Shown here one piece after another: positions 1,465-50,760 of a DNA stretch of 64,000 nucleotides. This stretch comes from Octopus sinensis. Its lineage: Eukaryota. The stretch is from contig NC_043001.1 of assembly GCF_006345805.1 (NCBI RefSeq), forward strand, positions 67,704,001 through 67,768,000. The letters are read 5' to 3'. Numbering within the stretch: the first letter of the stretch is position 1; every line of letters begins with the position of its first letter. A program made the position numbers and the translations under genes. The notes beneath the pieces are model-generated. The model searched no databases. It was not told the DNA's origin and saw only the letters and a program-made list of their open reading frames with translations.

Positions 1465-3242
1465 TCAATGGGATCCCTGTGACTGATGCAGGATTACCCA
1501 CTTGTTAATGTTTGGTTTCAAAGCTGTCAGTGAGATATGTTAATCCCCTCTTCTTTCTACGTCAAGGCGATTTCAAGTCTTTGACAGCAGACACATCACC
1601 CAACTGAAACCTGACTCAACTAAATAAGATGTGGGGAAAAGCAAGTAAAAGCAACTTAACGTTTTTTCAGAGTAATGGGTACTTTTTAGAGATTTCTTCA
1701 TACATCCACAGCTTCTGGTATCCTCCATACTTGAACCTTGCTAGAGCTGCTGTGTTATTTTGAAGTTCAATGAAGCTTTCTTGTATGTCAGTATTGACTT
1801 CAGATGGATCAACAGCGAAGGGATTCACAAACCACTGTGGCACCGTCATTTGGAGTAGATCAGAGAAGCAAATTTCTATATCATTATGTAACTGCTTCAA
1901 ACGATTAACGTAATCTGTTGAGTTATCATCAAGCAGCTTGGTGGATATGCTTGCTAAGGAACAAAGCTGTGCAAATTCCCATCTTCCAAGATTCAGCCAG
2001 AATAACTTTAGTTTCCCGTTGAAGGTTTTAATTTTCTCTTTGCCAGAAAACAAAGTGGTGTTATTTCCTTGAAGTTCTATATTAAGGACATTTAACCTTT
2101 CTAGTATGTCAGACAAGTAAAAAAAATATCACTCAATGCATCAACAAGTTTCTCTCTAAGTTCTGTTTCACTCAAAAAAAAGGAAAGATAACTGTGTTCC
2201 AAAGTGCATGGAGGCAATTACTCTTGGATAGCCATCTGACTTCTGTATGCAACACAAGTCGTTCAAATTCCTTGTTGTTATTTTCACATAACTGTTCAAG
2301 AGGCGATCTTACAGTGCATTTTTTTTTTTATCAAATTGACAGTTTTGATAACATTTATAAGTGCATCATTCAAAGTCCTGCCATGTGTTTGGCAACCAGA
2401 TGCTGTTAATGAAGAACACAATGCACCCAAAGCACATTAGGAACAGCTTTTTTAAAGTAAGCACTGAATCCTCAATATCTTCCAATCATAGCAGCAGCCC
2501 CATCTGTTGCACAAGCCACAATGTTCTTCAATGGGATGTTGTTCTCTTCAAAATAGGCCTCAAGTCTTTTGAAGATGGACTCCCCTTTTGTGTCAGTCAT
2601 TAATTTCAAAGCAAAAAGCAATTCTTGACATGTATCATTAACATTAAGAAACCTAACAAATTCCATTAAAAAAGGCAGAATTATCAGGTAGAGTTGATTC
2701 ATCTATTTGAAGTGAGAACTCATTTACCCTAAGTTTTGAAACTAATTGGCTTTCAACATCAGCTGCCATTTCATCAATCCGTCATGATGCTGATGAGTTG
2801 CTCAGAGAAATAACACTAGTAACCTCTTGTGGACTCTGATCCATGACTGTTGAAAGCACTACAGCCACTGCAAGCATAATCAAAGATTCACCAATGGTGT
2901 GAGACTAACCAGCTTTTGCAATTAAATTTCTATCTTATAAGAAGCCAACATTCCTTTGTCTACTTTTGCTGCTTTTTGAGTGAACATTTGATTCACTGTC
3001 ATCCTTCCTTGAAACTTATCATCACATAACCTTTTGAAGAAATCTAGTGGCTTGTCTTTTTTATCTCTGTGGGCAGTCTCCAGATGTTTTTTAGTTTGCA
3101 GGGACATATACTTTCATTTGAGAACAAAATCATGCATAGCAAACACATAGGCTTGGTAGAATTTTGTGGAGATTTAATGAATCCATAAGCAAGATATTCG
3201 ACAGAATATTGTCTACACTTTTTTTTTAGATATACTTGCCAT
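1465..3242 (-). pseudogene. Degenerate hAT (Charlie/Buster, SCAND3/ZBED-like) transposase spanning start to stop, with frameshifts and stops
   Basis: ATG at 3242 gives MASISKKK/CRQYSVEYLAYGF..PMCLLC (BED-like), KHLETAHRDKKDKPLDFFKRL, ACATDGAAAMIGRY (catalytic D), QWFVNPF, and C-terminal PNINKWVILHQSQGSH* (TGA 1467-1465). Confidence 0.85.
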
Positions 3243-6590: not shown

Positions 6591-7325
6591 AACAGAAGAA
6601 TATCCACTCTTAAAGAATAGGTAAATAGAAAGTCGTGACATTTTTGCATGTCTTTAGAAGTTTAGCTGTTTCGTTCAATTGAAAACAGAAACCAGATGAA
6701 TTAGTTTTAAATGCATGTACAGTAGTATGAAAAAGATTTTTTTCAAGCTTTTTTTTTGCTCAAAGAACCCTCTAGATTCAATACCGTCATCATTTAATGC
6801 CTCCATGGGTCAAACAAAATTCGTTCATTAAGGCAGATTTTTCTAAAGTCGGACGTTATCCCTGTCGCCAGCACTCACTCGTTTCCAATCAAGATAATGT
6901 TTCCCCACGGTCAAGCATGTTTTCACGGATTAGAATTCAACGACACTGCTTGTCAAGGATACATCCCCCCCACACACACACTATACCATTGTATTTGACA
7001 TAAAAATCAGTCAGTTTTGTTTATTGATTTCCTCTGTTTCCTGAAATATTCGACTCACCGTCCATCTTTTACATTTCATGTCTAACCTGTTGAACAATAA
7101 AAGCTACGTTAACGAGCTGCAGTTAACTAACTGAACACATAATATGGTACTTGTCTATTGTCGTGGTCCCGGTTTCTCACACGCGAATTCGCGCGTGCGC
7201 GCGCGCCAGACGTAGGTACTCGATACTCGAGATCCTACGAGGTGACTTGCGCATGCGCAGTGCAGAATTCGCGCATGCGTGTTACCCCCCACCCCCTAAA
7301 AAAAAGGTGTTGGATTTCACTAAAA

Positions 7326-7368
<43 letters not shown>

Positions 7369-7655
7369 ACATTTTCAATTTTACACAAAAAAATTACATA
7401 GTCGCTTTCCTCGCGGATTTACAGATAAATGAATTAATTACTATTTTACAGAATAAAATTAATGAATTAATTATATAAATTAAATAATTCTTGAAAATTA
7501 ATTAATATTAATAATATTTTTTGAACAAAGTAAATAATTTATAAAACTTGGTTAATAATTTTTTTTACACAAACGCGAACGTATATAATTTGTGAAACTT
7601 TTTTTTTTTTTTACAGACGTATATAATTTGGTAAACTTAATGAATTAATTTCTTC

Positions 7656-8078
7656 TCATCATCATCATCGTTTAACGTCCGTTCTCCATGCCAGCATGGG
7701 TTGGACGGTTCGACCGGGGATCTGGGAAGCCAGAAGGCTGCACCAGACTCCAGTCTTATCTGGCAATGTTTCTACAGCTGGATGCCCTTCCTAACGCCAA
7801 CCACTCCGAGAGTGTAGTGGGTGCTTTTTACATGCCACCCGCACAGGTGCCAGGAGAGGCTGGCAACGGCCACGGTCGGATTGGTGCCAGTCGAGGCGGC
7901 TCTGGCATCGGCCACGATTCGGATAGTGCTTTTTACGTACCACCAGTCCAGGGGTCCTGGCATTTGCCGGGTGCCACACTTGCCCCAACATGTCTTCGCA
8001 AGCAAAGGGGGTTGGCGTGGGTGCCTGTCGTGGGATGAGGTTCGATATCAACTTCGCTTGCCTCAACAGGTCTTTGTG
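7656..8078 (-). mobile_element. RTE-type LINE 3' UTR fragment nested in the left foldback arm
   Basis: Same 3' end and (GAT)n tail as the RT-containing LINE copies at 12558 and 50760. Confidence 0.8.
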
Positions 8079-9117
8079 TATAAATGTATAAATTTTTCGC
8101 ACTAAATTCTTTCCGTAGAATTTATCAAAAAACGCGCAAAATTATTCCGTAGAATTTATCAAATTAAAAAACGCAAAATTAATATATTTTTTGAAATTGC
8201 AAATTATTTAGAATATAAAACAAATGAAGTTAAATTTTAAAAATAAATGTCATATACTTATACTCTGTAAGGTGCTGTGTTCACACTTCAATTTACTATT
8301 TTCTAGAAATGCTGCTTTTCTAATTGAAACAATTTTTGTCAATCTCCATTTAAAAGTCCATCATGTCTCTTGAGACATATCAAAATGAACAACTTTGAAT
8401 TACGCGGCGGTGGTGGTGGTGGTGGTGGTGGTGTGAGGTTCTAATTTTTTTTTCTGATCTCTCTTTGCCCCCTCTTTATCTCAGTTGTTCATTCCGCTAA
8501 TATTTAGAAAAATTTTCGCGCCCAATTTTTGTTGTCGCGGGAAAAGATGAACGATTTAAAATAAATATATCTTAATTGTAGTGTGAGAAAGTATATATAT
8601 TCTGATGACAAAATATATTATCTTTCAAAAACATCCCAAATTTATAGACTATATCGTGTAGGTTTAAGAAATATATATATATATATATAAGAGAATGAAA
8701 CATCTTTCATCTGTCTCCCCACCACACCTCCATCTAGGGGGGCAAAGAGAGATCAGAAAAAAATTAGAACCTCACACCACCACCACCGCCGCCGCCGCGT
8801 AATTCAAAGTTGTTCATTTTGATATGGCTCAAGAGGCATTATGGACTTTTAAATGGAGATTGAGAAAAATTGTTTCAATTAGAAAAGCAACATTTCTAGA
8901 AAATAGTAAATTGAAATGTGAACACAGCACCTTACAGAGTATATGACATTTATTTTTAAAATTTAACTTCATTTGTTTTATATTCTAAATAATTTGCAAT
9001 TTCAAAAAATATATTAATTTTGCGTTCTTTAATTTGATAAATTCTACGGAATAATTTTGCGCGTTTTTTGATAAATTCTACGGAAAGAATTTAGTGCGAA
9101 AAATTTATACATTTATA

Positions 9118-9540
9118 CACAAAGACCTGTTGAGGCAAGCGAAGTTGATATCGAACCTCATCCCACGACAGGCACCCACGCCAACCCCCTTTGCTTGCGA
9201 AGACATGTTGGGGCAAGTGTGGCACCCGGCAAATGCCAGGACCCCTGGACTGGTGGTACGTAAAAAGCACTATCCGAATCGTGGCCGATGCCAGAGCCGC
9301 CTCGACTGGCACCAATCCGACCGTGGCCGTTGCCAGCCTCTCCTGGCACCTGTGCGGGTGGCATGTAAAAAGCACCCACTACACTCTCGGAGTGGTTGGC
9401 GTTAGGAAGGGCATCCAGCTGTAGAAACATTGCCAGATAAGACTGGAGTCTGGTGCAGCCTTCTGGCTTCCCAGATCCCCGGTCGAACCGTCCAACCCAT
9501 GCTGGCATGGAGAACGGACGTTAAACGATGATGATGATGA
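9118..9540 (+). mobile_element. Mirror copy of the RTE-type LINE 3' UTR fragment in the right foldback arm
   Basis: Reverse complement of 7656-8078; ends ...GGACGTTAAACGATGATGATGATGA. Confidence 0.8.
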
Positions 9541-9826
9541 GAAGAAATTAATTCATTAAGTTTACCAAATTATATACGTCTGTAAAAAAAAAAAAAGTTT
9601 CACAAATTATATACGTTCGCGTTTGTGTAAAAAAAATTATTAACCAAGTTTTATAAATTATTTACTTTGTTCAAAAAATATTATTAATATTAATTAATTT
9701 TCAAGAATTATTTAATTTATATAATTAATTCATTAATTTTATTCTGTAAAATAGTAATTAATTCATTTATCTGTAAATCCGCGAGGAAAGCGACTATGTA
9801 ATTTTTTTGTGTAAAATTGAAAATGT

Positions 9827-9867
<41 letters not shown>

Positions 9868-10419
9868 TTTTAGTGAAATCCAACACCTTTTTTTTAGGGG
9901 GTGGGGGGTAACGCGCATGCGCGAATTCTGCACTGCGCATGCGCAAGTCACCTCGTAGGATCTCGAGTATCGAGTACCTACGTCTGGCGCGCGCGCACGC
10001 GCGAATTCGCGTGTGAGAAACCGGGACCACGACAATAAAGTACAACATAATATAGTAATATGTTCAAATACCAGCGAGTTCAACTTGGCTTTTCATTCTT
10101 TAATCAACTTAATTTCTCCCTCAAAAATTGCCGGCCGACCACAGTGGTGATCCAGCATGACCGCAGCCGCATGGCAGAAACGAATAAACGAGTAGTACCA
10201 AAATTGGAAAAGGAAAATGTCAAGTGTCAAATTATTGTTTTCGTGCTAGAGGGAGTACAAAATTACCTCCCTTTAAGTAAAGGTATTATCTCCCTTGAAA
10301 GAAAAATAATTCGCTGTTAATCCGATTTTGCTGATTCGGTAAGATTTGCCTACCTGTGGTAACGGCATTCAAGCCATGACTATTTCGTCATTTTAGAAAT
10401 ATCTAGGCTACTTCATTGG

Positions 10420-10686
10420 GATATGTTGCCTTGGTACGCTACTGTAATCCAGTTACCTCGAAGTTTGGTTGATTGTCCGGTTTGAGGATGGGAATCTTGG
10501 TAGTCGGTCTTCTATAGCGACCGGGTGTCCGTGTTAAGTTCTGCATCAATATGGTGCTCATCAGACCCAGCTTGTCTCAGGAGGGTCGATTCAACCCAGG
10601 GCGAAAACACGGCAGGCAAAAGACCCCGTGTCGAGCAGTAGTGTGAATAGCCGTCAACTAGCAACCTCTTCGATATAATTGATTTT
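10420..10686 (+). ncRNA. 7SL: 7SL / SRP RNA-like gene (divergent paralog or pseudogene)
   Basis: Alu-domain CTGTAATCC; ACCGGGTGTCCGTGTTAAGTTCTGCATCAATATGGTG matches the conserved 7SL GGGTGTCCGCACTAAGTTCGGCATCAATATGGTG; AGGAGGG..CCCAGG..GCAGG helix-8 region; CAGTAGTG..GTGAATAGCC. The 3' end ATAATTGA pairs with 5' TTGATTGT and is followed by TTTT at 10683-10686. Confidence refers to homology, not function. Confidence 0.88.
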
Positions 10687-11899
10687 AGAGAGACTAGCTG
10701 CTATTTCTTACAGATTTCACTATTCCATACATGCTCCACTGCAGCCAGTCGCCTGTTCATATTTAGCCTCATGCCATTTTAAATCAAAGATATTTCAACC
10801 ATAACCATCAAGTCTCACATTTAAAGACAGAATGTCTATAAGTTTATATTAAACATTGTGTACTTCTTCTAAACGACCGTAGCCCTGTGTTTTGACGTCT
10901 ATTTCTAGTAGGTTGAATGATCAAGCAGAGATATTCTTGGCTTTTAAGGAAGTCAGTTGTGTCTAATTCCCTACTTATCTTAGCTAGTTCTATTTATATT
11001 AATGACAAGATTACGGAACATATATCCTTGTGACTGAATGACCAAGCACAAAACATTAGGCCACCAAAGGTAGATATCTTGTCCATAAACAATATTCTAC
11101 CTGCCATTACCCTCTCATCCCTTGACAACCATTATCTTCTTACCTTTGCCATCTCGTTTATTGACATCATTCATGTCCCCCCTTACCAAACATTATCTCA
11201 CCTCCTCTATACTGCTAGCCACTACTCTCTTTTTCCCAGTCCACTCTTTACTGACATCCATCAAACTTTTGTTAACACTTCTATCATTATCCATCTCTTT
11301 CTCCTAAAATGTAACTACCATTACTACTTCTCTTCCGTTACCCATACCATGACTTCTCTCCCGTTACCCATACCATGACTTCTCTCCCATGTACCCTCTT
11401 CCACAATCTCACCTCAATCACTGTTTTCACCCATTATACTGTCTTCTCCCCCTCATCCTAATTCACATTCTGCTATCGAGCACTCTTTAGTCCTTTCACA
11501 ATGCTCTCATAGCATAGAGGAATGAGGTTCCCTTTTGTTTTACATGGTACACAGCAACCTCACAAGTGCTGGTGCTAGATAAAATACATCCAGTACACTC
11601 TGTAAAGTAGTTAGAGAATGAGCAGAGATACTTTAGGGTTGAGAGGACTGCTTGGTCTTTGTCATATTGAGGTCATGTGCTGATGACACAACAAAATACA
11701 CCCACTACATACATTCTTTGAAGTGATTGGTGTTAGAAAAAGTATGCAGCCATAGAAGCCAAATCAAAATAAAATTTATGAGTGAAACTTGATTTCTCAA
11801 AGATGCCTATGTGGCAGTAACTCTGACAACCCGTTCAACCTATGCCAGCATAGAAAGCAAATGTAAAATGAGGATGATGATATGTGTATTTATATATGT

Positions 11900-12157
11900 C
11901 TCATCATCATCATTAAACATCCACCTTCCATACTGGCAAGGGTTGGACGGTTTGACAGGAGCCGGCCAGGCAGGATCCTGTACCAGACTTGTGTCTGTTT
12001 TGGCAGAGTTTTTATGGCTGCATGCCCTTCCTAACACTGACCACCCTGCAGAGTGCTTTTTAAGTAGCACAAGTGCAGGCAAGGTCAGTTTTGGCATGGT
12101 TTTTACAGCTGGTTGCCCTTCCAAATACCAACCACTTTTTAGTGTGGATTGGAGCAC

Positions 12158-12557: not shown

Positions 12558-14403
12558 ATCATCATCATTTAATGTCTGTTTTCCATGCTAGCATGGGTTG
12601 GACGGTTCGACCGGGGTCTAGTAAGCAATAGAGGCTGCACCAGGCTCCAGTCTGATATGGCAGTGTTTCTACAGCTGGATGCCGTTCGTAATGCCAACCA
12701 CTCCGTGAGAGTAGTGGGTGTGTTTTACGTGCCACCGGCCCAGGGGCCGGAGGAAGCTGGCAAACGACCATGATCGGTTGGTGCTTTTATGTGTCACCGA
12801 CACAGCCGCCAGTCAGGTGGCGCTGGCATCTGCCACGTTCAGACGGTGCTTTTTACGTGTCACTGGCACAGGTGTCTTAACTACAATCTCCATTTGATTT
12901 TTATTTTGATGTTGGTGTTGATGTACTTGACTCAATAGGTCACCTCGAGAACAGCGGGTCACTCTACGATCCAGGCGAGCCATGAACTCACTTAATTTTT
13001 TGGGTCTTCACAGTCACAGCATATCTCAGGGGTCTCAGTCTTTGTCATTTCCTCGGTCTTTTCGTCATAGCCTCTGTGAGGCTCAACGTACTAAGGTCAT
13101 GCTTAACCACCTCGTCCCATGTCTTCCTGGGTCTACCTCTACCCCGGATTCCTTCAACAGTTTGGGAGTGGCACTTCTTTACACATCTCTCCTCATCCAT
13201 CCATAGTACATGACCAGACCAACACAATTGTCTCTCCTGCACGCTGCATCTGATGCTTCTAATGCCCAACATTTCTCTCAGGGCGCTTACACTCTGTCAT
13301 GCATGGACACTGACATTACACATCCAGCAGATCATGCTAGCTTCATTTCTTTCGAGCCTAAACATGTCTTCCGCAGTCACAGCCCATGTTTCACTACTGT
13401 GAAGCATAGCTGTTCGCACACATGCGTCGTACAATCTACCTTTCACTCTGAGCGAGAGACCCTTTGTCACCAGTAGGGGAAGAAGCTTCCTAAACTTTGC
13501 CCAGGCTATTCTTATTCTTGTGGTAACACTCTCTGAGCATCCATCCCCGCTACTAACTTGGTCACCTAGGTAGTGGAAACTATCAACTACTTCTAGTTTC
13601 TCCCCTAGGAGTGTAATGGAATCTGTTTTCTGAGTATCAGTGGTGTCTATAGCCCCTGTGCATCTGCCGCACATGAAAGCTATCTTCTCGGTTAATTTTC
13701 CTTTGATATTGCTGCACTACTTATGTGTCCATAGCTTACACTGGGTACATCTTATGGAGTTTCTACCTACACCTTTTCTACAGATCGAGCGGGTGTGTGG
13801 TGAGTTTGCCTTCCTACTTAATAGAACTTTGGTCTTTGCTACATTGACTCTAAGGCCTTTTGATTCTAAACCTAGCTTCCACACACAAAATTTCTTCTCT
13901 AGTTCCAGTAGTGATTCTGCTACGAGGGCTAAGTCATCAGCATAGAGGAGCTCCCAGGGACAACCCGTCTTAAATTCCTCTGTTATTGCCTGGAGGACTA
14001 TGATGAATAGAAGGGGACTGAGGGCTGAGCCTTGATGGACACCAACTTCTACCTGGAATTCACTCATTGCCAATCCTAACTTTACTAACAGCCTCTCTGT
14101 AAAGGGCCTGTACAGCCCTTATTAACCATTCGTCAATCTCCAGTTTCCGCATCGCCCACCAGATAAGGGATTGGGGGACTCTGTCAAAGGCTTTCTCCAA
14201 GTCCATAAAAGCTAAGTATAGGGGTTTATCTTTGGCTAGGTATTTCTCCTGCAGTTGACGAACTATGAATATGGCATCAGTGGTGCTTCTACCCGGCACA
14301 AAACCGAACTGCATCTCATCTAAGCAAGACTCTCTCCTTGATGAGATGGGCTATGACTATCTCTGTGACCTTCATTACCTGATCCAGCAGTTTGATACTC
14401 CTA
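12558..14403 (-). mobile_element. 5'-truncated RTE-clade LINE (reverse transcriptase, C-terminus and 3' UTR), frameshifted
   Basis: QFGFVPGRSTTDAIFIVRQLQEKY..DLEKAFDRVP, GVHQGSALSPLLF, CPWELLYADDL, LEVVDSFHYLG, LHSSETW; (GAT)n tail at ~12558-12568. Confidence 0.92.
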
Positions 14404-18722: not shown

Positions 18723-21700
18723 CATATCTAAATTATATGAAATAATTATTGCTGGCTTAAAAATCAGAATATAATTTTTTTTAACTCATTAAGTACACTG
18801 ATTATCAACATTATTCAGGCAGCAAAATAAATTTAAAATTGAATTTTCATGCATTTTAAAAAATGGTATGACAATTGGAATTGCTTGTAGAGGTCCTTCA
18901 TACTTAAAGGGTTAACATTTGGTAAATTTTTATGATGTTTAAATGTTTACGATCCATTAACTACTTAACATACATCATCATCATCTTATACATTAGGTGA
19001 GCCTGAAATTTTGTAAATATGATAAGAGTCATTGATATAAAGAGTATGGCACAAAAACCCCACATACTTTACATGGTGAAATTGGGAAGTTTTCTTTTTG
19101 CTGTACTCTGTATGTGTATATCTCCAAACATTTTTCCTACATCAACCATGACAAAAGAGTGGAATCTGTAGCAAGCAGGATGTTATGTGCTTTACTCAAG
19201 TGGTTGAAATAGTAAAACACATGACCATGTTGTTGCTAGTGTTCAACCTAAAATGCCTTTGTTTCCATGTTGCTTCAAGAACAGGCATTCCTCACACTAT
19301 GAGGAATGTTTATTTTGTGGTCATGAACATTTGTTTGAATAAATAAATATTTAGTATATTGTGAGAAATATTGATTAATCTGACAATTGATTGAGATCTC
19401 ATGAGCCAGTGGGTAATGAAGAATATCTTAATTGTTAGGAATATAGCTATTTGTTGCCTTCTCTGGATGCATAAGAAGATTTATGATCAGTGTCACAATA
19501 CAAGCTAATTAGAAGCTAAATCTTTCCACACTAAAAAGTCCAAACAGGTCAGACTTAGACTCCCAGTTTCTGTAGGGATTAGTCAATGAAGATATATTTA
19601 CTCCTGGATAAGCTATAAGTAGATTTTCTTAGACAAGAGAGTGAGAGCTAGCTTGCAGTGCTGAGTTCCCACTACAATGTTCTTGTTGGTTACAACAGTT
19701 GACAATAACACATGAAGATCTCACTAGATCTTAGCATTAAAGCAGCTTAGCATTCCTAGATTCCTGCTACCCACAATTGTCAGTTGAACCTCTTCATGGT
19801 ACCTATTTCACCACGAGCTGAACTGATTCATACTAGTAGCCTTTTTGATCATTCTGACACTAAACTATCTTGACCACTTTAAACTTAATAATTCTACAGA
19901 CATTTGCTAGGAGAAAGCACAATAAGAATACAAAGAGGTGTGTGTGTGTGTGTCTATGTATGTCTGTATGAGTTCTTTGACCATACCCAGAGAATATAGT
20001 TGAAAACAACCATGTCTGCTGAAATGTATGGCACTAACATAATTCTCTAAGACTTGCAAGGAAGTGTGAGAAAAAAAAATCAAGATATAAAATGAACTTA
20101 AAACTATTAAACTGAACCATTTCAAAACAAAAGGCAGATTAGAAATAATAATAATGATGCTGATGGTGATGATGATGATAAACAACGTTGTGTCACTGAA
20201 CCATTTCTCAAAAGAAAAAAAATATTGAAAAAACAAAACAAAGAAATATGTTTGACACTTTCTGACATGAAATGACAATATTTATACCAAACTAAATGGA
20301 ACAAAAGAGTTGTCAGAGAATCTATTGAACCCACTCTTTCTCTCTAGAGACTGTTATTTGTTCTTCTGTACACCTCAGAGAAGTCTGAGAATGAAATTTG
20401 AAACCCAGAAGATAATTTTAATACAATTAAAGAAAAGAGAAAGAAAAAAAAAAGTGTTAACTTTACTGTTCTTTAAATAATGACTTCTTTCTTCAAACAA
20501 ATAAACAGAATATCTTGATATTATTCCAGTACATTGCTGGTACCCACCTTGTATGACCAACAGGATTCAAACTCAGAAATGTGAAGCAATAAATAAATTA
20601 TTTTATTATTAATGGTTTCATCAAATTAATAGGAATAGCAACTTTGACTTTTATAGGGCTCTGGGTAGGGATGAGGAACAGAGGCAGAAATGGGAGAGAT
20701 CTGATCTGTAAAGAAACCCAAAAGCAAGGTGTTAGGGTTAAAATCAGGCAATAGATTAAGCCCACCACTCAACAACAGGTACAGTCCTGCAGTGAGCATC
20801 TACAAGGTTTTTTTTTTACATCTAGTTTCACTGATATAGCTTTGGTAGACTTAAGGCCAAGGTAGAAGACACTTGACCAAGGTACCATGCAACAGAAGTG
20901 AATTGGGAACATATGATAACAAAAGGAACTTCTTAAACATATGACCATGGTTGTGCCATTCAACTAGATAATTTAAAGTTATCTACTGCAGCTTTACATT
21001 TTCCAATATATAATCTTCCACCTTTTCCTAGTTTATAATAAAGAACAGTACCCAGTTTTATAAGGGATCAAATAATACGATTGCTTAAATCAAGCACAGT
21101 AAATATACATACATCACACATATACATGTAAATATATACACATGTACACACACACACACGCATATACATGTATGTGTGTATATGTTTATGTGTACTTATC
21201 TTCTGGAGGAATTAATCTTAAAAAGATATGAGAATGAAACGAATTCACATACACAAACCAATGAAAACAGCAAATAAAACACCGTTCATTTGTTTTACAT
21301 CTGGATTAGATGAAATTGTTTTAAAGCCAGATGCCCTTCCTGTCAGTAACCCTTACCTGATTTTCAAGTTTAGTAGTATAAGTATTATAATTTGGCTGTT
21401 CACAGTCATCACTACATGAATGAGAAATTAAGACTGAAATTTTCTTGAATTTCTCAATGAGATTACTGATAACTAATGGATGGGAAGCAGTTATAACTAA
21501 GAATTGGAACTGTGCTTTAGATAAGCCCTAACAAGAGTTTACTACCTCCTCCCTCTCTCTACATGCACACACACATATATATAGTTGTCTGAGCTTACAT
21601 ATGTAAGAAAAAAAAATAGGCACTCACACATTAAATTATAGAGAGCACATATTTATACAGTATTTATAAATTTAGCCTTGTAATACCCTAGTATTCACCT

Positions 21701-24817: not shown

Positions 24818-26168
24818 ATAATAATAATGATAGCTTTTCTGTTGAACAATATCTAAGACATTTCAGCTAACAGAGGGAGGGAAGCAGAATGTTGCAAGGA
24901 CAATGATTTTCCAAAAAGAGCATTAATTTCATACATTTTCAGTTAGATACAGGAATTAACCTCAGTATTTTAATGCAACTAATTTTTTAATCAACTCTGT
25001 AAAGGTAAAAGGTAACTCTGATGAAATTTGAACTTAGAGACTATGAGGTACTCAACTAATTCCTCTGAAATCAACTGATGTAGTGTTCTGCTGTACTGGA
25101 CAGCACAACCACCAGGATTAATTTCATCAGAACCCTCTCTAGAATCTTTGTAAAGTAACAATTTATCATTTTTATATGAGTAGGGTAGAGTAGTGTGAGA
25201 TGTATGGATAAATAGATAGACATATGGCTGGAAAGATGGATAGATAGATATACAGACAGATAACGAGAGTAAAAGAATAAGAGATTTAATTGTTTCAGAA
25301 ATGCTCAGTATACAAGCTACTTTGATTCTATTGTCAAAGACTAAATTAGAAGAATGGTCAGTTTTACTTCACACTCTCCCTTCTCATTGTCTGCAATGTC
25401 ATCTATGAGATACAGCAAACTTGAGTAACTTAAGCTCAACACTTTAGCTATAGTCCTAGTCTTTAGACCCAGGATGACATAAATTTGGTATGTTTCAAAG
25501 AAAATCTTGTTGATATTCTTGAGTTTTTTTAATTTGTTTCTGTTTTTTAGAAATTCCAGTTGCAATGCCAACCTGATACTGGACTGAATTCCTCAGTAAA
25601 CTTCAATATTTTAGAATCATTTCAACATTGCTAGATAAAATGATTAAAAAAAAGACACCACCTTTTCCTAAATCTGTTTAACTCCAAATACAATGCTACC
25701 CGTGTGTTTTGAAAGGAAATATAAAATGGATTTTATTAATTTTATGGAGGATTATAAATATGTTACTTCGAAGTGTGTGATGACAAAATATTGTTTTTTT
25801 TTTCCTATATAAAATGTGCATAGTAGAGTACCACTTCGAGACAGTACAATCAGTGAGCAAACCATTCTTCAAAGACACACTGAAATTATGAAATTAAACT
25901 ATATATTATTTATGTGTGTGTATAATTATGTATGTATGCATGTGTGTGTGTATACACACACACACACACGTAAATATAAATGTGTGTGGGTTCAATAAAA
26001 TTAGAGTAAAGTAACAAAAATAATGCTGTAAATTTAAATATTGGAAGAAAACTCTAGCCATGTCTAGGAATGGAGAAAAACAAAACAAAAACAAACAAAA
26101 TGAATAGATAACCAACAACAAAACAAAAAAACAACAAAAGGAAAATGGTGTAATGTTCATGAAGATGG

Positions 26169-28490
26169 TTAGGATAATTCCATTTGCTCGTCACAGATTA
26201 AAGTACCATTATTTGTCTGGTTCTCACTAGCAGTGAAGTTTCTGGTTTGACTGAAGTCTCGGTGTTGTTCATTGTTTTCTACAAGAACAGAAGTGTGTTT
26301 AAAATTTAGGTCAGAACCCTGAATGTTTGTATATGGTGGTAAGCAATCCTTTGCTGACAGACACTTGGCAGAGATCTCACTGGTTGTTGTTCCTGTATAG
26401 GGGGAATACATTCTGGCCACATTATGCTCTGGCTTTGAATGTAAAAAGTTGTTGTTATTTACTGTGAGATCACAGGTTGCTGTATTACTATTATTTTCAA
26501 CAGGAGACAATGCGTAAGAAAGATTTGTCATTTGGTGGTCACAACCAGTAAAATTTGGCACCGCCACTCGGCAACCAGCTTGCAATTGAGTCTGTACAGA
26601 ATTTAAGTGAAGTGCATTACACAAGTTAGAGGATTTCTGTGACTGTACATATGCAGATACTTCGCATGAAGAAGGGTAACAGCTTGTATTGACATTTTCT
26701 GCTGTTTCTTTGGGAACCAATAATAAAGGTGATGCAAATTGGGAAGGAATTGATGAGTCTATGAATTGTTGATTCTGATTGGCTTCATAAATGAGGGATG
26801 ATGGAGTTGAAGAAATTGGGGGTAAAATTTCATTAGGACAAACAATCTTTTGTGGCATTACCTGCGGTGAATATGGAGTAGGTTGGTGGGAGAAAGAGTA
26901 GCACGTAATATCAGAAGGCCTTGATTGAAAAGATTGTTGATTGTGGGGTTGAAATGTCGAGACAGGCTGGTTTACAGTGGCCAGCTTCGTAGTTGTAGAT
27001 TTTACCTTTGTTGTGTTGGGAAAGCCTTGTGGTGTCATGTAATACATACTGTACTGCATAGGTGGGTAGACAGTTGGAGCTACTTGCTGGGTGGAAGCTG
27101 GTGTCACATTGGAGCCACTAGAACCAATATTCAGTTGCTGGAATTGGTGCTGAAGAACAGATTGCTTGTGGAAACTTTGCCTCTTTTGCTGAAGACGTAG
27201 ATGCTGCAATATCTTCTTACCACCTGGGTGATATTCTGTAGCTGTGTTAGTGACACCTTGATGATGAAATAATAATTGGGTTGTTGGTTCACTCTGGACT
27301 TGATCAAGATGCTGTTCAACTTGCATGCTCTGTTTCAGGGCCAAGAGCCTGTGAGGTTGCATATCAGTAGTCTCAGCAGGTAAACTCATGCGCTTTATCA
27401 GCTGTCGAGGTTTGGAGGCTGGGGCTTCCTCTAGTGACCACTGTCTCCACTTCATTCTCTCGTGATAGTTGCGATGGGAACGAGCTTTGTTTAATTCAGC
27501 TGTCCCTTTTGAGGGTCCAGTGTTACTGGCCAGCTCTTGAAATTCTTGCCGGAGTTCTGCTATCCCCTGGGCTCTAGTTGTATCACGCAGCTGTTGGCGA
27601 AACGCAATCATACCTTGAGTCATTTGTCCATCGGAAGCTCGTCTTCCTTCTCGGAAGTCAACAGGTGAATGTGTCTCGTTTCGGTCTTGAGAATAATCAG
27701 CACTTACTTGAGTTGATACTAAAGGAGGACTTTGTATAGGTGTAGGGATTGTAGTGGAAATGACTGTTCCTTGGCCAGGTTGCTGACCAGATGGTGCCGT
27801 TGAGTATCCAGCATGAGAGTAAGATGTCTGGCTTAAACCAATATCTGCCTCTAATGTTGAATCAAAGCTGGTAAAAGGTGAAGATTGGTTACTATCAGAA
27901 CTTACTTGGGGCGATATATCAGATGTATCAGAAAACTTTTGCATTTTGGTCCGGGTGTCCGAACCATAACTATCTATTTCTGATATATCTGCCTCAACAC
28001 CCTCATCAATGGAAGAGGTAATCAAATGGCTTGTCATAGTGTGTGAAGGTTTGAGACAGGTTTGAGACAGTACATCAGAGAGGCATGCTGGCTTGGCAAT
28101 AGGTGTGGCTTGGGGTAAAACAGATGGGATTACAGGCAGTGGAGGATTAGCAGTGGATCGATTAGTTGTATCAGAACTTTCTGAATAACCAGAGGTGTGT
28201 TGTGGGACAGTCGTTGATGGCCCAATTGGAGGGACACAGTCTGTAGTTTTTGTGAACAAACTTTGCTTGGTATTGAGTGGTTGCATGCGGTAAGCTGGAT
28301 TTGGGACTACACTTGGTGCTTGGGTGGAAGCAAGACGTGGATTCATGGCTTGTTCAGCAATTTGACTTGGTCGCCGTTTTCGCGCATCCAGTTGATTATA
28401 AACAGGAAAACTGCTACGATGTTGCTTGAGCCGATCAAGTAATAAATAATATATTGCACTGAATGGATCATATGCATTATTTTTCAGAGA
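26169..28490 (-). CDS. SIK2: Salt-inducible kinase, terminal coding exon (end of UBA domain plus entire C-terminal tail, 773 aa + stop)
   Basis: Acceptor TTTTCAG at 28491; SLKNNAYDPFSAIYYLLLDRLK (UBA), RRPSQIAEQ, SSIDEGVE, EGRRASDG, TQGMIAFRQQL and KGTAELN are SIK1/2-type motifs; TAA at 26171-26169. The ORF track starts too late (28346). Confidence 0.93.
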   Translation of the reverse strand, partial: SLKNNAYDPFSAIYYLLLDRLKQHRSSFPVYNQLDARKRRPSQIAEQAMNPRLASTQAPSVVPNPAYRMQPLNTKQSLFTKTTDCVPPIGPSTTVPQHTSGYSESSDTTNRSTANPPLPVIPSVLPQATPIAKPACLSDVLSQTCLKPSHTMTSHLITSSIDEGVEADISEIDSYGSDTRTKMQKFSDTSDISPQVSSDSNQSSPFTSFDSTLEADIGLSQTSYSHAGYSTAPSGQQPGQGTVISTTIPTPIQSPPLVSTQVSADYSQDRNETHSPVDFREGRRASDGQMTQGMIAFRQQLRDTTRAQGIAELRQEFQELASNTGPSKGTAELNKARSHRNYHERMKWRQWSLEEAPASKPRQLIKRMSLPAETTDMQPHRLLALKQSMQVEQHLDQVQSEPTTQLLFHHQGVTNTATEYHPGGKKILQHLRLQQKRQSFHKQSVLQHQFQQLNIGSSGSNVTPASTQQVAPTVYPPMQYSMYYMTPQGFPNTTKVKSTTTKLATVNQPVSTFQPHNQQSFQSRPSDITCYSFSHQPTPYSPQVMPQKIVCPNEILPPISSTPSSLIYEANQNQQFIDSSIPSQFASPLLLVPKETAENVNTSCYPSSCEVSAYVQSQKSSNLCNALHLNSVQTQLQAGCRVAVPNFTGCDHQMTNLSYALSPVENNSNTATCDLTVNNNNFLHSKPEHNVARMYSPYTGTTTSEISAKCLSAKDCLPPYTNIQGSDLNFKHTSVLVENNEQHRDFSQTRNFTASENQTNNGTLICDEQMELS

Positions 28491-28580
28491 CTGAAAATAG
28501 AAATGAAATTAAGAAAATATTTAAGAATATAATACATTAATAAATATATGCATAAGAGTGTATGTATGTGTGAATGAATG

Positions 28581-28612
<32 letters not shown>

Positions 28613-29189
28613 ATATATACACACACATGGGTCATCCCCACCATTCACTACATCCATCCCTCAACACTTGTTCTTCATTCATTATATTCACATCTCCTCT
28701 CAACCATCCCTCATCGATAACTCCTCCATACACTCTTGCAATCTCTACACACCCACACTGCTGGTACTTCTGTCTCCACTTCACTCCCTACTCATCTTGA
28801 GGATCAACTCAGAGACCTCATCATCACTATTCTTATCTCTTCCCAGCTCTACCCTGTCTATTCTAAAATATGAATAGTCATGAAACTCCTGTATAGCGAG
28901 AAACCTGTTCAGCTCTGGACCCTTCCTTCATACTTGAACCCCTCATCTACTAACATATAGTTTCTCCCACCATTATTCCAAGGGGTTTGTAACCTTGCAA
29001 GCTACCTGGCAACCTCACTATTGCTGGTAGCATGAAAAAAAACACCCAATACACACTGTAAAGAGGTTGGATGTCAGAAAAGTTCAGGGATGTCTGGAAC
29101 TAAACAACATTACTTGAGTGTCTTCCTAGGCCTTAAAAGGCTCGATCAATCTTTTTCAACTAACAAAGATGTTGATGATTGAAGACATA

Positions 29190-35426: not shown

Positions 35427-35482
<56 letters not shown>

Positions 35483-36719
35483 CACACACACACACACATA
35501 CATATATGTGTATATCATACACAGAGACATTATACATATATATTGTATACATAATATATATATATGTGTGTTTATAGAAAAAAAATTCAGCCATTTACAC
35601 ATAAATATAGACACTGACACATCACAGTAGAGCTCCGAGAGAAGCCAAGTTGAATAGAACAACAGTGAAGTGTCTATTAGAAAGCATGTACAAGTGGCAA
35701 TGATAAGTTAAACGGATTATCAAGGAGAGGAAGGGTGGATGTGTTTTTTTAGAGTCATACATACAGACATAGAATAGAAAAGAATAAAAATGAAATCTGA
35801 CTAAAACAACAACAACAACAATAATAATAATAATGGTTTCAAATTTTACCACAAAGGTAGCCATTTTGGGGGAGGGGATCAGTCAATTACATCAACCCCA
35901 GTGTTTCACTGGTACTTAATTTACCGACTATGAAATGATGAAAGGCAAAGTCGACCTTGGCAGAATTTAAAGTATCTGCTGTGAGTGTTCACTATTCCCA
36001 GCAAACCTGTCAAAGGACTAGCCTAGAATTACATCATGGATTCACTGTTGCTGAAATATCCAGCAGACCACACACACAGTTTCTCAGTATTGCGTAACAC
36101 GTAAAGAATATTTTAAAAACAAGAATAACAACCTGCCAAGCAAAAACCACAGACACACACACACACACACACACACAGCATGGTACTTTCTTTTTTATTT
36201 GAAACTCTTGTACAAGAGTTAAACGAAAAAATTTACACCTTATGAACATTTGGCAACAATCTTTCTTCCTGTTCCATCCCAACCCTCCATTTAGTTGTTA
36301 ACTTATTATTATTAAGGTGGCAAGCTGGAAGAATCGTTAGAGTGTTGAATGCTTAGTGGCATTTCTTTCAGATCTTTACATTCAAATACTGTCAAGGTCA
36401 ACTTTGCTTTTCATCCCTCTGGAGTTGATAAAATAAAGTACCAGGCAAGGACCAGGGTTGATGTAATCAACTTGTTCCTCACATCACCTCAAAATTATTG
36501 TCCTTATGCCCAAATTTGAAACCATTATTATTACTATTATAAGTGTGGCAACCTAGCAGAATTGTTAGAGCATCAGACAAGATGTTTTACAGTATTTGCT
36601 CTGAGTCTTTAAATTCTGAGTTCAAATCCCACTGAAGTTAACTATGCCTTTTGTCCTTCACGGTCAATAAAATAAAGTATCAGTTTACCACGGGAGTTGA
36701 TGGAATTCCAATTTACCAG

Positions 36720-48486: not shown

Positions 48487-49590
48487 ACTACATAAATCTG
48501 ATCAATGTGTAATGCATGAAAGTACTAGATTATTTCAATATTGTAAAATTGTAAAAACTGCAAATAACACAACATAACAATTTTCAAAAAAAAAAAAAAA
48601 TTTATTGTATTTTTTTTATTGCTTATCACTCCATTTTTCTTGCTGATTCCAAAAATGAAACTATTTTTTGTGTATCATCAACAGTTAAAAAAATGTCGAC
48701 TTTCAATGTTATTATATATTCGATATTGTTATAATGTTCAGCTACTAAACGTATGTCTAATTTTCTTTTTCAGACCAATTACTAAGTTCTACTACTTTCA
48801 GGATGGCTACTAGAGTATGTAAAATTCTCCAGATACATTTTGCTATGTGTGTGGTTATTATATTGGAAAAAAGCAGGTATTGCATAAGAACGTGAAAGGT
48901 GCCAAATTGTGGATACGTACAGGCTCTATTTCATAATGCCCATGGGTGACCAGGACAAACCACTGCCCCACATGTGATATGTGGAAACTGTCGATCTACT
49001 CTAGAAGGATGGTTAAGAGGTACAGGAAGGTCAATGCCTTTTGCCATTCCAAGGGTATGGAGGGAGCCAAAGAACCAATGACTTACTTTTGTATGATCAA
49101 CGTGCCAAAGTACAGAAAAGTGAAAGGAAGACAAGCTCTTCAGTATCCAAACATACCATCATCTAGAGTACCTGTCCCACATGATGACAGTTTACAAGTA
49201 CCACTACAACCAGAAAATATTTCATCTGAAGAGTCAAAAAGTAGCAGCAGCCAAGAAATAGAGGAAACTTTCATACCAAGAATGACTTCAGAGCCTCACT
49301 TTCCAAATCAGAGTGAGCTAGATGATTTAATCAGAGATCTGGGTCTTACTAAGTCAGGAGATGAACTTCTTTCATTAAGGTTGAAAGAATGGAATCTACT
49401 GGGGGAAGACTGCAAGACATCTGGGTACTGGAAACACCATGAAGAATTTGAAATTTACTATGAAAATATTAATGGTCTGCGTTATTGTAAAGATGTGATT
49501 GGTTTATTTACTGCTATTGAACTCAAGCATGATTCTGCAGAATGGCGACTGTTCATAGGCAGCTCAACACGAAGTCTCAAAGCAGTGTTG
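48487..49590 (+). mobile_element. 5' part of a Chapaev3-like (CMC) DNA transposon with frameshifted transposase
   Basis: MATRVCK/SPDTFCYVCG, MGDQDK, YFCMIN, QYPNIPSSRVPVPHD, QSELDDLIRDLGLTK, EWRLFIGSSTRSLKAVL; CAC-start near 48487. The family assignment is from recalled motifs. Confidence 0.7.
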
Positions 49591-49599
49591 CCTCTTGCA

Positions 49600-50760
49600 C
49601 ACTCTATATATATAGGGATAATAAACACTGAAGATGCTTAGGAAACAGATTCCATCACATCTCAGGGGGAGAAACTAAAAGTAGTTGATAGCTTCCACTA
49701 CCTAGGTGACCAAGTCTGTAGTGGGGGTGGATGCTTGGAGAGCATTGCCACTAGAATAAGAATAGTCTGGGCAAAGTTCAGAAAGCTCTTACCTCAACTG
49801 GTGACAAAGGGCCTCTCACTCAGAGTGAAAGATAGACTATGATGCATGTGTGCGTACTGCCATGCTACACGGCAGTGAAACATGGGCCATAACTGTTGAG
49901 GATATACGTAGGCTTGAAAGAAATGAAGCTAGTATGATCCGCTGGATATGTAATGTCAGTGTGCACACACAAGAGTGTGTAATCACCCCGAGAGAAATGT
50001 TGGACATAAGAAGCATTGGATGTGGTACGCAAGTCGTGCTGCATATGGTTGAGGAGAGCTGTGTGAAGAAGTGTCACTCTCTAACAGTGGAAGGAAGCTG
50101 TAGAAGAGAGAGACTCAGGAACACATGGGGTGAGGTGGTGAAGCATGACCTTTGAATGTTGGGCCTCACAGAGGTGATGACAAGAGACCGAGACCTCTGG
50201 AACTAGGCTATGATTGAGAAGACTGGGCAAGTAAAGTGAGATCACAGCTGTAGATTTTACCAGTGTCGCATAACCAGCCCATTTAAAAAGTACCTTTGAA
50301 TTGTTGGGCGACATGCCATGCTTCAGGAGACCTACTGAGTCAAGTAAAATCAAAAGTCAAAATCAAAAATAGCAATAAGCATCATTCATGTGTGGGTCGT
50401 TGCCAGTGCCACCTGACTGACTCCCTGTGCCAGAGGCATGTAAAAAGCACCATCCGAATGTGGTCAATAGCAGTCCCCCCAACCCTGCTTGCCCCAACTG
50501 GCTACTTTGCTAGTGGCATGTAAAAAGCACCATCCAAATGTGGCTGATGCCAGTGCTGCCTGACTGGCTCCCATGCCGGTGGTACGTAAAAAGCGTCCAC
50601 TACACTCTTGGAGTGGTTGGCATTAGGAAGGGCATCCAGCTGTAGAAACCTTGCCAGATCAGATTGGAGCCTGGTGCAGCCTCCTGGCTAGCCAGTCTCC
50701 AATCAAACCATCCAACCCATGCCAGCATGAAAAACAGATGTTAAACAATGGTGATGATGA
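49600..50760 (+). mobile_element. 5'-truncated RTE LINE (same family as 12558-14403)
   Basis: GEKLKVVDSFHYLG, MLHGSETWAITVEDIRRLERNEASMIRW; 3' UTR with GTAAAAAGCACC modules; (GAT)n tail at ~50750-50760. Confidence 0.88.

What the first reader, a model, noticed from the sequence alone, without database searches (positions are those of the whole stretch)
10370..10690. Compact 7SL/SRP RNA-like gene with a remodelled S domain
Seen: the span runs from the Alu domain to a TTTT terminator (267 nt). Pairing is retained: Alu loop-loop GGUA/UACC, terminal UUGAUUGU/AUAAUUGA, GAGG/CCUC, GUUCUGCAU/GUGUCGAGC (one mismatch) and helix-8 base GGGUC/GACCC. However, helix 6 is reduced to GGUGCUCAUCAGACC with no GNAG tetraloop. 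The helix-8 tip reads CAGG-GCG-AAAA-CAC-GGCA instead of CAGG-NNN-GAAA-NNN-AGCA, and ~11 nt of the helix-5 3' strand (GGAUCGCGCC in human) are missing. There is no poly(A) tail or TSD; an AT-rich box at ~-20 and a CGTCA at ~-33 lie upstream. Established: SRP19 binds the helix 6/8 loops, SRP54 binds helix 8, and SRP9/14 bind the Alu domain. Inference: either a decaying DNA-level duplicate, which I consider somewhat more likely, or an expressed Pol III RNA that keeps the Alu elongation-arrest module but cannot recruit SRP19/54, akin to BC200/Alu-type translational regulators.
Basis: partly seen in the sequence, partly recalled or inferred. Interest (0 to 1): 0.72.

Follow-up and report, generated by a model that had tools for sequence, protein, structure and literature searches.

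The report
Decayed 7SL (SRP RNA) pseudogene in octopus
This is a real but badly eroded copy of the signal recognition particle RNA gene in an octopus chromosome, almost certainly a dead pseudogene and not a new kind of regulatory RNA, so it is ordinary.

Summary
Window 10421-10686 (+) is a full-length derivative of metazoan 7SL/SRP RNA (Rfam RF00017, 79.4 bits against a cut-off of 70, E 2.9e-18), and it is the only one in the window. The window is Octopus sinensis DNA, and the element lies about 15.5 kb downstream of SIK1. I recovered ten bona fide 7SL loci from other animals. One comes from a contig of an assembly that also carries a cuttlefish-like SIK gene. Intact genes score 228-274 bits.

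Compared with them, the octopus copy has:
- a 12-nt deletion that removes the helix-6 tip and its GGAG loop;
- an uncompensated 12-nt deletion of the helix-5 3' strand (GGGAUCGCGCCC);
- a shortened 3' end;
- AAAA in place of GNRA, and GGCA in place of AGCA, in helix 8.

It has lost 32 of 156 positions that are invariant in seven intact genes. Of the 18 substitutions among these, 14 are GC->AT, and they are spread evenly over all domains, the Alu domain included. Only 65 of 120 consensus pairs remain standard, against 95-100 in intact genes.

The "Alu module kept, regulatory RNA" reading is not. Three things were not shown: the intact Octopus 7SL gene, the orthologous locus in relatives, and expression. 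Interest is low.

The parts
10421..10686 (+). Whole 7SL/SRP RNA-derived sequence (266 nt): a decayed, full-length copy.
   Evidence: RF00017 match at 10421-10684, 79.4 bits, E 2.9e-18. About 70% identical to intact 7SL genes.
10421..10467 (+). Alu-domain 5' part (helices 2-4). UGUAAU (10443-10448), G13, G14 and C37 are kept, but the stems are damaged.
   Evidence: 9 of 14 consensus pairs are standard, against 10-14 in intact genes. 5 of 25 invariant columns are substituted, the highest rate of any region.
10547..10574 (+). Helix-6 remnant. A 12-nt deletion removes the distal stem and the GGAG (GNAR) tetraloop, which is the SRP19 site.
   Evidence: Alignment gap after about 10555 against all intact genes. 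9 of 18 helix-6 pairs lack a partner. All 92 SRP-derived ORFs that could be parsed keep the full spacing here.
10582..10627 (+). Helix 8 (SRP54 site). The tetraloop is AAAA (10604-10607) instead of GNRA. The closing stem GCG/CAC has a C.A mismatch. The symmetric-loop 3' side is GGCA (10611-10614) instead of AGCA.
   Evidence: About 70 parsed SRP-derived ORFs encode the loop's first G, with two exceptions: the otherwise intact L001 (AAAA) and one FMPW ORF.
10640..10645 (+). Site of the uncompensated 12-nt deletion (between 10642 and 10643) of the helix-5 3' strand GGGAUCGCGCCC. The 5' partner CCGGGUGUCC (10520-10529) is still present.
   Evidence: Pairs 104-113/236-247 all lack their 3' partner. 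None of 106 parsed SRP-derived ORFs lacks this segment.
10675..10686 (+). Shortened 3' end (about 8-10 nt of the terminal helix-5 strand are missing), followed by TTTT (10683-10686), a minimal Pol III stop.
   Evidence: pairs 48-55/288-295 lack a partner.
10386..10403 (+). Upstream CGTCA (-35 to -31) and an AT-rich stretch (-30 to -18). These may be promoter remnants or chance.
   Evidence: Read directly. The upstream regions of intact genes share no clear common motif with it.

Best explanation
Window 10421-10686 is a non-functional, decaying copy (pseudogene) of the cephalopod 7SL/SRP RNA gene in Octopus sinensis. It arose from a full-length, cephalopod-type 7SL sequence. Most likely this happened by DNA-level duplication or as a dispersed member of a gene cluster undergoing birth and death, although old retroposition is not excluded. 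It then drifted neutrally towards the AT-rich composition of the genome.

Three small deletions and about 13-16% substitution at otherwise invariant positions have destroyed the SRP19 site (helix-6 GNAR loop), damaged the SRP54 site (helix-8 GNRA loop and AGCA), broken the part of helix 5 that pairs the 5e/5f region (SRP68/72 site), and weakened the Alu-domain stems. It therefore cannot assemble an SRP.

Shown here: the homology, the deletions, the loss of invariant positions and pairs, the mutation spectrum, and the existence of intact cephalopod-type genes alongside similarly decayed copies. Inferred: loss of protein binding (from the established roles of these motifs), lack of function, and the existence of an intact gene elsewhere in the Octopus genome.
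For: 1. Homology over the whole model, but at only 79.4 bits. Intact 7SL loci recovered here score 228-274 bits.
2. At 156 columns invariant in seven intact genes, the copy keeps 124, lacks 14 and has substitutions at 18. Of those 18, 14 are GC->AT and 3 are AT->GC.
3. Substitution rates at invariant columns are even across regions, 0.12-0.20, with the Alu domain highest.
4. 65 of 120 consensus pairs are standard, against 95-100 in intact genes. 26 pairs lack one partner because the deletions are one-sided.
5. The helix-6 and helix-5 deletions occur in none of 92 and 106 parsed SRP-derived ORFs from many organisms, including Dreissena polymorpha.
6. The GNRA first G is encoded in about 70 parsed loci, with two exceptions (L001, AAAA; one FMPW ORF).
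7. The minimum-energy fold does not give the SRP rod: -74.6 kcal/mol, z = +0.08. Intact genes fold into it at -113 to -131 kcal/mol.
8. Contig L013 comes from an assembly that also holds a SIK gene 87% identical to the cuttlefish one. It carries an intact 7SL gene (246.8 bits) plus copies at 190.4 and 120.6 bits. The 120.6-bit copy has lost 29 of the same 156 invariant positions, which matches the state of the window copy.
9. The window copy shares 8 exclusive states with that gene, against 0-4 with any other (for example CGAUUC and AAAAGACCCC). This indicates a cephalopod-type parent.
Against: The intact Octopus 7SL gene itself was not retrieved, so the parent sequence is inferred. Expression could not be tested. 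A TTTT stop and an upstream CGTCA plus AT-rich box exist, so residual Pol III transcription is possible.

Three pairs changed on both sides yet still pair (6-21 G-C to U-A, 77-269 C-G to U-A, 179-216 A-U to U-A). That is about the number expected by chance at this divergence, and at least the 3' A of pair 179-216 is inherited from the cephalopod-type parent.

Folding z-scores separate intact from dead copies poorly (L013a -1.13, L013c -1.29), so that line of evidence is weak.

The taxon of L013 rests on co-occurrence in one metagenome-style assembly.
Confidence: 0.86

Rival explanations
1. It is an expressed Pol III transcript: a diverged 7SL paralogue that has shed SRP19/54 binding but keeps an Alu-like module, and acts as a regulatory RNA in the manner of BC200 or Alu RNAs.
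For: TTTT terminator, and an upstream CGTCA and AT-rich box at -35 to -18. UGUAAU, G13/G14 and C37 of the Alu domain are kept. No retroposition hallmarks, so an upstream promoter could have been copied with it.
Against: The Alu domain has the highest loss of invariant positions (5 of 25). Helix 3 has 3 of 8 mispairs, and the 3' strand that closes the Alu-domain part of helix 5 is deleted. The fold is no more stable than shuffled sequence and has no SRP-like architecture. The substitution spectrum is the neutral GC->AT one. No second copy or family was found in about 270 kb of octopod DNA.
Confidence: 0.06
2. It is the normal, functional 7SL RNA of octopods, and the lineage simply has a compact, remodelled S domain.
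For: It passes the Rfam gathering score. No other Octopus copy could be retrieved with the tools at hand.
Against: SRP54 binding to the helix-8 GNRA/AGCA motif is universal (established knowledge), and here the motif is mutated. The helix-5 deletion is one-sided. A probable decapodiform cephalopod gene and all other animals sampled keep every one of these features. Only about 190 kb of non-redundant O. sinensis/O. vulgaris DNA (about 270 kb of octopod DNA in all) was searchable, so failing to see another copy means little.
Confidence: 0.02
3. It is a pseudogene, but of a different origin: an old processed (retroposed) 7SL copy and not a DNA-level duplicate.
For: It is a solitary copy far from any 7SL cluster, in a region full of SINE and LINE fragments. 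It is truncated at the 3' end. Retroposed 7SL pseudogenes are common in mammals (established knowledge).
Against: No A-rich tail, and no flanking direct repeat longer than a chance 7-mer. Full-length 5' end. A possible promoter remnant lies upstream. At this age these marks may simply have eroded, so the test is weak.
Confidence: 0.25

Closest known systems
Metazoan SRP (7SL) RNA genes, Rfam RF00017
   Same: Homologous over the full model (Alu domain, helix 5, helices 6 and 8) and ends in a T run. Keeps UGUAAU, much of the helix 5/8 core sequence, and the GGCAAAAG and GUGAAUAG motifs.
   Different: Scores 79 bits against 228-274. Lacks the helix-6 GNAR loop, has AAAA for GNRA and GGCA for AGCA, and has a one-sided 12-nt loss in helix 5 and a shortened 3' end. 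48% G+C against 54-62%.
7SL pseudogenes of other animals; here the decayed copies L013b and L013c beside an intact gene on a probable decapodiform contig
   Same: Full-length 7SL derivatives with a comparable loss of invariant positions: L013c loses 29 of 156 and scores 120.6 bits, while the window copy loses 32 of 156 and scores 79.4 bits.
   Different: The window copy is solitary, about 15.5 kb from SIK1, and not in a 7SL cluster. Its deletions are its own.
7SL-derived SINEs and their RNAs (Alu, B1, BC200; SINE1). SINE1 is known only from primates, rodents and hagfish (PMC10886601).
   Same: Derived from 7SL.
   Different: The S domain is still present. There is no A-rich or LINE-derived tail, no target-site duplication, and no other copies in the octopod DNA held. 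The Alu stems are eroded.

Membership tests
Functional metazoan SRP RNA (RF00017) | Covariance-model score at or above the curated gathering score | tested here: met
   79.4 bits against 70, but 150-195 bits below intact genes.
Functional metazoan SRP RNA (RF00017) | Alu domain: UGUAAU turn, loop-loop G13/G14 with C37/N34, and paired helices 2-4 | tested here: inconclusive
   The motifs are kept. 9 of 14 pairs are standard, against 10-14 in intact genes. 5 of 25 invariant columns are changed.
Functional metazoan SRP RNA (RF00017) | Helix 6 with a GNAR tetraloop (SRP19 site) | tested here: not met
   A 12-nt deletion removes the loop and distal stem.
Functional metazoan SRP RNA (RF00017) | Helix 8 with a GNRA tetraloop and the AGG/AGCA symmetric loop (SRP54 site) | tested here: not met
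   AAAA loop, a C.A mismatch in the closing stem, and GGCA for AGCA.
Functional metazoan SRP RNA (RF00017) | Continuous helix 5 joining the Alu and S domains, including the 5e/5f region (SRP68/72 site) | tested here: not met
   Of 71 helix-5 pairs, 39 are standard, 15 are mispaired and 17 lack a partner. Intact genes have 57-60 standard pairs.
Functional metazoan SRP RNA (RF00017) | Transcribed by Pol III and assembled into SRP | not testable with these tools
   No expression data. TTTT is present. No ORF from this locus is in the protein collection, which is uninformative.
7SL pseudogene (decayed gene copy) | Clear homology to 7SL, with loss of positions that are invariant in functional genes | tested here: met
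   32 of 156 invariant positions are lost: 14 deleted and 18 substituted.
7SL pseudogene (decayed gene copy) | Changes distributed as neutral decay: no domain spared, a mutation-biased spectrum, and pairs broken without compensation | tested here: met
   Rates of 0.12-0.20 in all five regions. 14 of 18 substitutions are GC->AT. The deletions are one-sided.
7SL pseudogene (decayed gene copy) | An intact gene exists elsewhere in the same genome | not testable with these tools
   Only about 190 kb of non-redundant O. sinensis/O. vulgaris DNA (about 270 kb of octopod DNA in all) could be fetched. An intact gene was seen only on a probable decapodiform contig.
Processed 7SL retropseudogene / 7SL-derived SINE (SINE1) | A-rich or LINE-derived 3' tail and target-site duplications | tested here: not met
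   No A-rich tail. The longest flanking direct repeat is 7 nt, with about 0.3 expected by chance.
Processed 7SL retropseudogene / 7SL-derived SINE (SINE1) | Many dispersed copies, with the S domain deleted | tested here: not met
   No other copy in the window or in L007-L009 and L012. The S domain is present.

The most novel reading that the evidence does not exclude
The eroded copy is still transcribed by Pol III from its own upstream remnant. It would yield a ~266-nt, SRP-incompetent 7SL-like RNA with some regulatory role, or it would be the seed of a 7SL-derived SINE lineage in cephalopods. Such SINEs are so far known only in primates, rodents and hagfish.
Probability: 0.04. Interest if true: 0.55.

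Novelty: new member of a known kind. Interest (0 to 1): 0.1.

Why it matters
It matters little in itself. It is one more dead copy of a housekeeping RNA gene, and automatic annotation may label it as a real SRP RNA because it just passes the Rfam cut-off, so it is worth flagging as a pseudogene. Together with the three-copy cluster on the probable decapodiform contig, it suggests that cephalopod 7SL genes evolve by duplication and decay. It would only become interesting if it proved to be transcribed.

Tried and rejected
1. Looking for the intact Octopus 7SL gene. No collection of eukaryote DNA can be searched by nucleotide sequence. I therefore translated the antisense open frame across the S domain (10515-10685) and used it, and then a profile of the hits, in the protein search. 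This gave 145 spurious ORFs lying on 7SL genes of many organisms, and through them ten 7SL loci (L001-L006, L010, L013 with three copies, L014). None is from Octopus: BLAST of their flanks against the octopod DNA held finds no shared repeats.

2. Orthologous locus. Loci fetched through SIK1 of O. sinensis, O. vulgaris, O. bimaculoides and Argonauta hians end at window position about 16.0-16.2 kb, about 5.5 kb short of the element. No SRP match was found in the 10 kb downstream of Argonauta SIK1, which is not informative.

3. An exact look-up of ten ORFs around the element found none in the protein collection, so there was no other route to neighbouring contigs.

4. Literature searches for 7SL in octopus and for SRP RNA pseudogenes in invertebrates gave nothing specific.

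5. Folding z-scores. The window copy has z = +0.08, but intact and dead controls overlap (-2.15, -1.13, -1.29), so I give this little weight.

6. The AAAA loop as a lineage feature. It is also seen in L001, an otherwise intact gene of unknown origin. It is absent from the probable cephalopod gene and is one of only two exceptions to the loop's first G among about 70 parsed loci. I rejected it as a lineage feature.

7. The compensatory-looking double changes (three pairs) are about what chance gives at this divergence, and one is partly inherited.

Full report
**What is there.** A scan of the whole window against Rfam gives a single match above the curated threshold. It is Metazoa_SRP (RF00017) at 10421-10684 on the + strand, covering model positions 1-299, at 79.4 bits (gathering score 70) and E 2.9e-18. 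A permissive scan (E<=1) adds no further SRP match. All the other weak hits are microRNA models lying on (TG)n/(TA)n microsatellites.

**Where it is.** The 725-aa open frame at 26169-28346 (-) is the last exon of SIK1 and is 99% identical to the Octopus bimaculoides protein. The window from 16169 to 64000 is 100% identical to the SIK1 locus of assembly GCA_006345805.1, 98.6-98.9% identical to GCA_951406725.2, and 93.5% identical to O. bimaculoides over 11 kb of mostly non-coding DNA. From the accessions and protein names, the window is Octopus sinensis. The 7SL-like element lies about 15.5 kb downstream of SIK1 on the opposite strand. Its surroundings hold tRNA-SINE copies, a LINE reverse-transcriptase fragment (RVT_1) and a large palindrome.

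**Getting intact genes to compare.** No eukaryote DNA collection could be searched by nucleotide sequence. I therefore translated the antisense open frame that runs through the S domain (10515-10685) and searched the protein collection with it, and then with a profile of the hits. Gene callers had predicted spurious ORFs on 7SL genes in many assemblies, and 145 proteins matched. Fetching some of their contigs gave ten 7SL loci. Intact ones score 254-274 bits, 246.8 bits, and 228 bits for one cut at the contig end. These are 150-195 bits above the octopus copy.

One locus, L013, comes from ENA assembly ERZ21867824. That same assembly holds a SIK gene 87% identical to that of the cuttlefish Acanthosepion pharaonis, so L013 is probably decapodiform cephalopod DNA. 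This is an inference from co-occurrence in one assembly. L013 carries three 7SL loci within 12.4 kb, scoring 246.8, 190.4 and 120.6 bits: an intact gene and two decaying copies.

**How the octopus copy differs.**
- It is 61-70% identical to all of the recovered loci, while intact genes from different organisms are 72-91% identical to one another.
- A 12-nt deletion removes the distal stem and the GGAG tetraloop of helix 6.
- A 12-nt deletion removes GGGAUCGCGCCC from the 3' strand of helix 5, while its 5' partner CCGGGUGUCC (10520-10529) remains. The loss is one-sided and not a compensated shortening.
- About 8-10 nt are missing from the 3' terminal strand.
- The helix-8 tetraloop is AAAA instead of GNRA, its closing stem has a C.A mismatch, and the conserved AGCA is GGCA.

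In the wider sample of SRP-derived ORFs, the spacing that encodes the helix-6 tip is full length in all 92 that could be parsed. The helix-5 segment is present in all 106 parsed, including an annotated Dreissena polymorpha protein. The first G of the helix-8 loop is encoded in about 70 parsed ORFs, with two exceptions: L001 (AAAA) and one ORF reading FMPW.

**Is the pattern decay or remodelling?** At the 156 alignment columns invariant in seven intact genes (the probable cephalopod one included), the window copy keeps 124, lacks 14 and has substitutions at 18. Of the 18, 14 are GC->AT and 3 are AT->GC. This fits drift towards the 36-40% G+C of the surrounding DNA. In the earlier six-gene comparison, the rate of substitution at invariant columns was 0.20 in the Alu 5' domain, 0.19 in the helix-5 5' strand, 0.12 in helix 6, 0.16 in helix 8 and 0.12 in the helix-5 3' strand.

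Mapped on the Rfam consensus structure, 65 of 120 pairs are standard pairs, 29 are mispaired and 26 lack a partner. Intact genes have 95-100 standard pairs. Three pairs changed on both sides and still pair (6-21, 77-269, 179-216). That is roughly what chance predicts at this divergence, and the A of GACCC is already present in the probable cephalopod gene.

The predicted fold (-74.6 kcal/mol, z = +0.08) does not reproduce the SRP rod. Intact genes fold into it at -113 to -131 kcal/mol. Z-scores alone separate intact and dead copies poorly, since the dead L013c has z = -1.29, so I treat this as weak support.

The obviously dead copy L013c has lost 29 of the same 156 invariant positions and scores 120.6 bits. 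The window copy, with 32 lost and 79.4 bits, is in the same or a worse state.

**Parentage.** The window copy shares 8 character states exclusively with the probable cephalopod gene L013a, for example CGAUUC in the 5' strand of helix 8, AAAAGACCCC, and ACC before the helix-4 closing strand. It shares only 0-4 with any other intact gene. It therefore descends from a cephalopod-type 7SL gene. That intact gene has the helix-6 GGAG loop, the helix-8 GAAA loop with AGCA, and the full helix 5. The unusual features of the window copy are thus not the cephalopod norm.

**Mode of origin.** There is no A-rich tail, and the longest direct repeat between the flanks is a 7-mer, with about 0.3 expected by chance. 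The copy is full length at its 5' end and has a CGTCA and an AT-rich box upstream. However, the marks of retroposition would be blurred at this age, the upstream motifs are weak, and the upstream regions of intact genes share no obvious motif with it. I leave this open: about 0.25 for retroposition.

The substitution level at invariant sites is 12-16%. The total divergence between O. sinensis and O. bimaculoides is 6.5%. This suggests the copy died well before those species split, so it should be present in other Octopus species. I could not test that.

**Mechanism.** Helix-6 and helix-8 loops bind SRP19, helix 8 binds SRP54, the 5e/5f region binds SRP68/72, and the Alu domain binds SRP9/14. 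These roles are established knowledge and were not tested here. By them, an RNA made from this locus could not assemble the S domain, and its Alu domain lacks the closing helix-5 strand. The most likely state is a silent or at best weakly transcribed relic with no function. I put this at 0.86. The reading as a regulatory, Alu-module RNA is not supported by any pattern of conservation (0.06). The reading as the normal octopod 7SL is contradicted (0.02).

**What was not achieved.** I did not retrieve the intact Octopus 7SL gene or the orthologous locus in relatives, because all fetched flanks stop about 5.5 kb short. I have no expression data. The decisive computations are a genome-wide cmsearch in the three Octopus assemblies, a comparison of the orthologous sites, and RNA-seq read counts across the deletion junctions.

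**Verdict.** It is an ordinary 7SL pseudogene, a new member of a known kind, and of low interest.

Noticed in passing
window 7156-8471 and 8737-10037: Near-perfect palindrome with arms of about 1.3 kb (a 659-nt core is 100% complementary, the rest 93-99%) around a spacer of about 265 nt. Each arm carries a tRNA-SINE copy and a (TG)n run. The right arm ends about 380 nt upstream of the 7SL-like element. It could be a real inverted duplication or a long-read assembly foldback.
   Followed up: no
window 7661-7887, 9309-9537, 11901-12044, 12558-12784: Four copies (72-92% alike) of a short interspersed repeat that begins ATCATCATC...CCATGC.AGCATGGGTTGGACGGTTCGACC. Similar copies occur in the O. bimaculoides SIK1 locus. 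It is probably one of the octopus tRNA-derived SINE families.
   Followed up: partly
window 13045-14314 (-): Fragmented LINE-type reverse transcriptase (two ORFs hit Pfam RVT_1). It is about 80% identical to another copy inside the O. vulgaris SIK1 locus.
   Followed up: partly
window 26169-64000 (-): The SIK1 (salt-inducible kinase) gene. Its last coding exon is at 26169-28346, and the rest of the gene extends beyond the window end. The sequence is 100% identical to GCA_006345805.1, which identifies the window as Octopus sinensis.
   Followed up: yes
window, many sites (e.g. 21106-21199, 25911-25988, 28558-28642, 35437-35571): All sub-threshold microRNA matches (mir-297, mir-466, mir-3149, mir-1277) fall on (TG)n/(TA)n microsatellites and are artefacts of low complexity.
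   Followed up: partly
L013 4076-4364, 10145-10442, 16161-16463: A contig from ENA assembly ERZ21867824, which also carries a cuttlefish-like SIK gene, holds three 7SL loci within 12.4 kb. They score 120.6, 246.8 and 190.4 bits: an intact gene with two decaying neighbours. This suggests birth-and-death evolution of 7SL genes in cephalopods.
   Followed up: partly
L010 (GCA_030422855.1), whole locus: 7SL genes are arranged in tandem with an 862-nt period in an unidentified animal assembly. L004 and L005 also show repeated flanking ORFs, which suggests arrays.
   Followed up: no
L001 1537-1834 (-): An otherwise intact 265-bit 7SL gene of unknown origin has AAAA instead of GNRA in helix 8. It is one of only two exceptions to the loop's first G among about 70 parsed SRP-derived ORFs. 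It could be a very young pseudogene or a tolerated variant.
   Followed up: partly
window 1667-2702 (-) and 48946-49641 (+): Open frames of 149, 76 and 231 aa with no Pfam match. They look like transposase-type remnants, but this was not established.
   Followed up: partly
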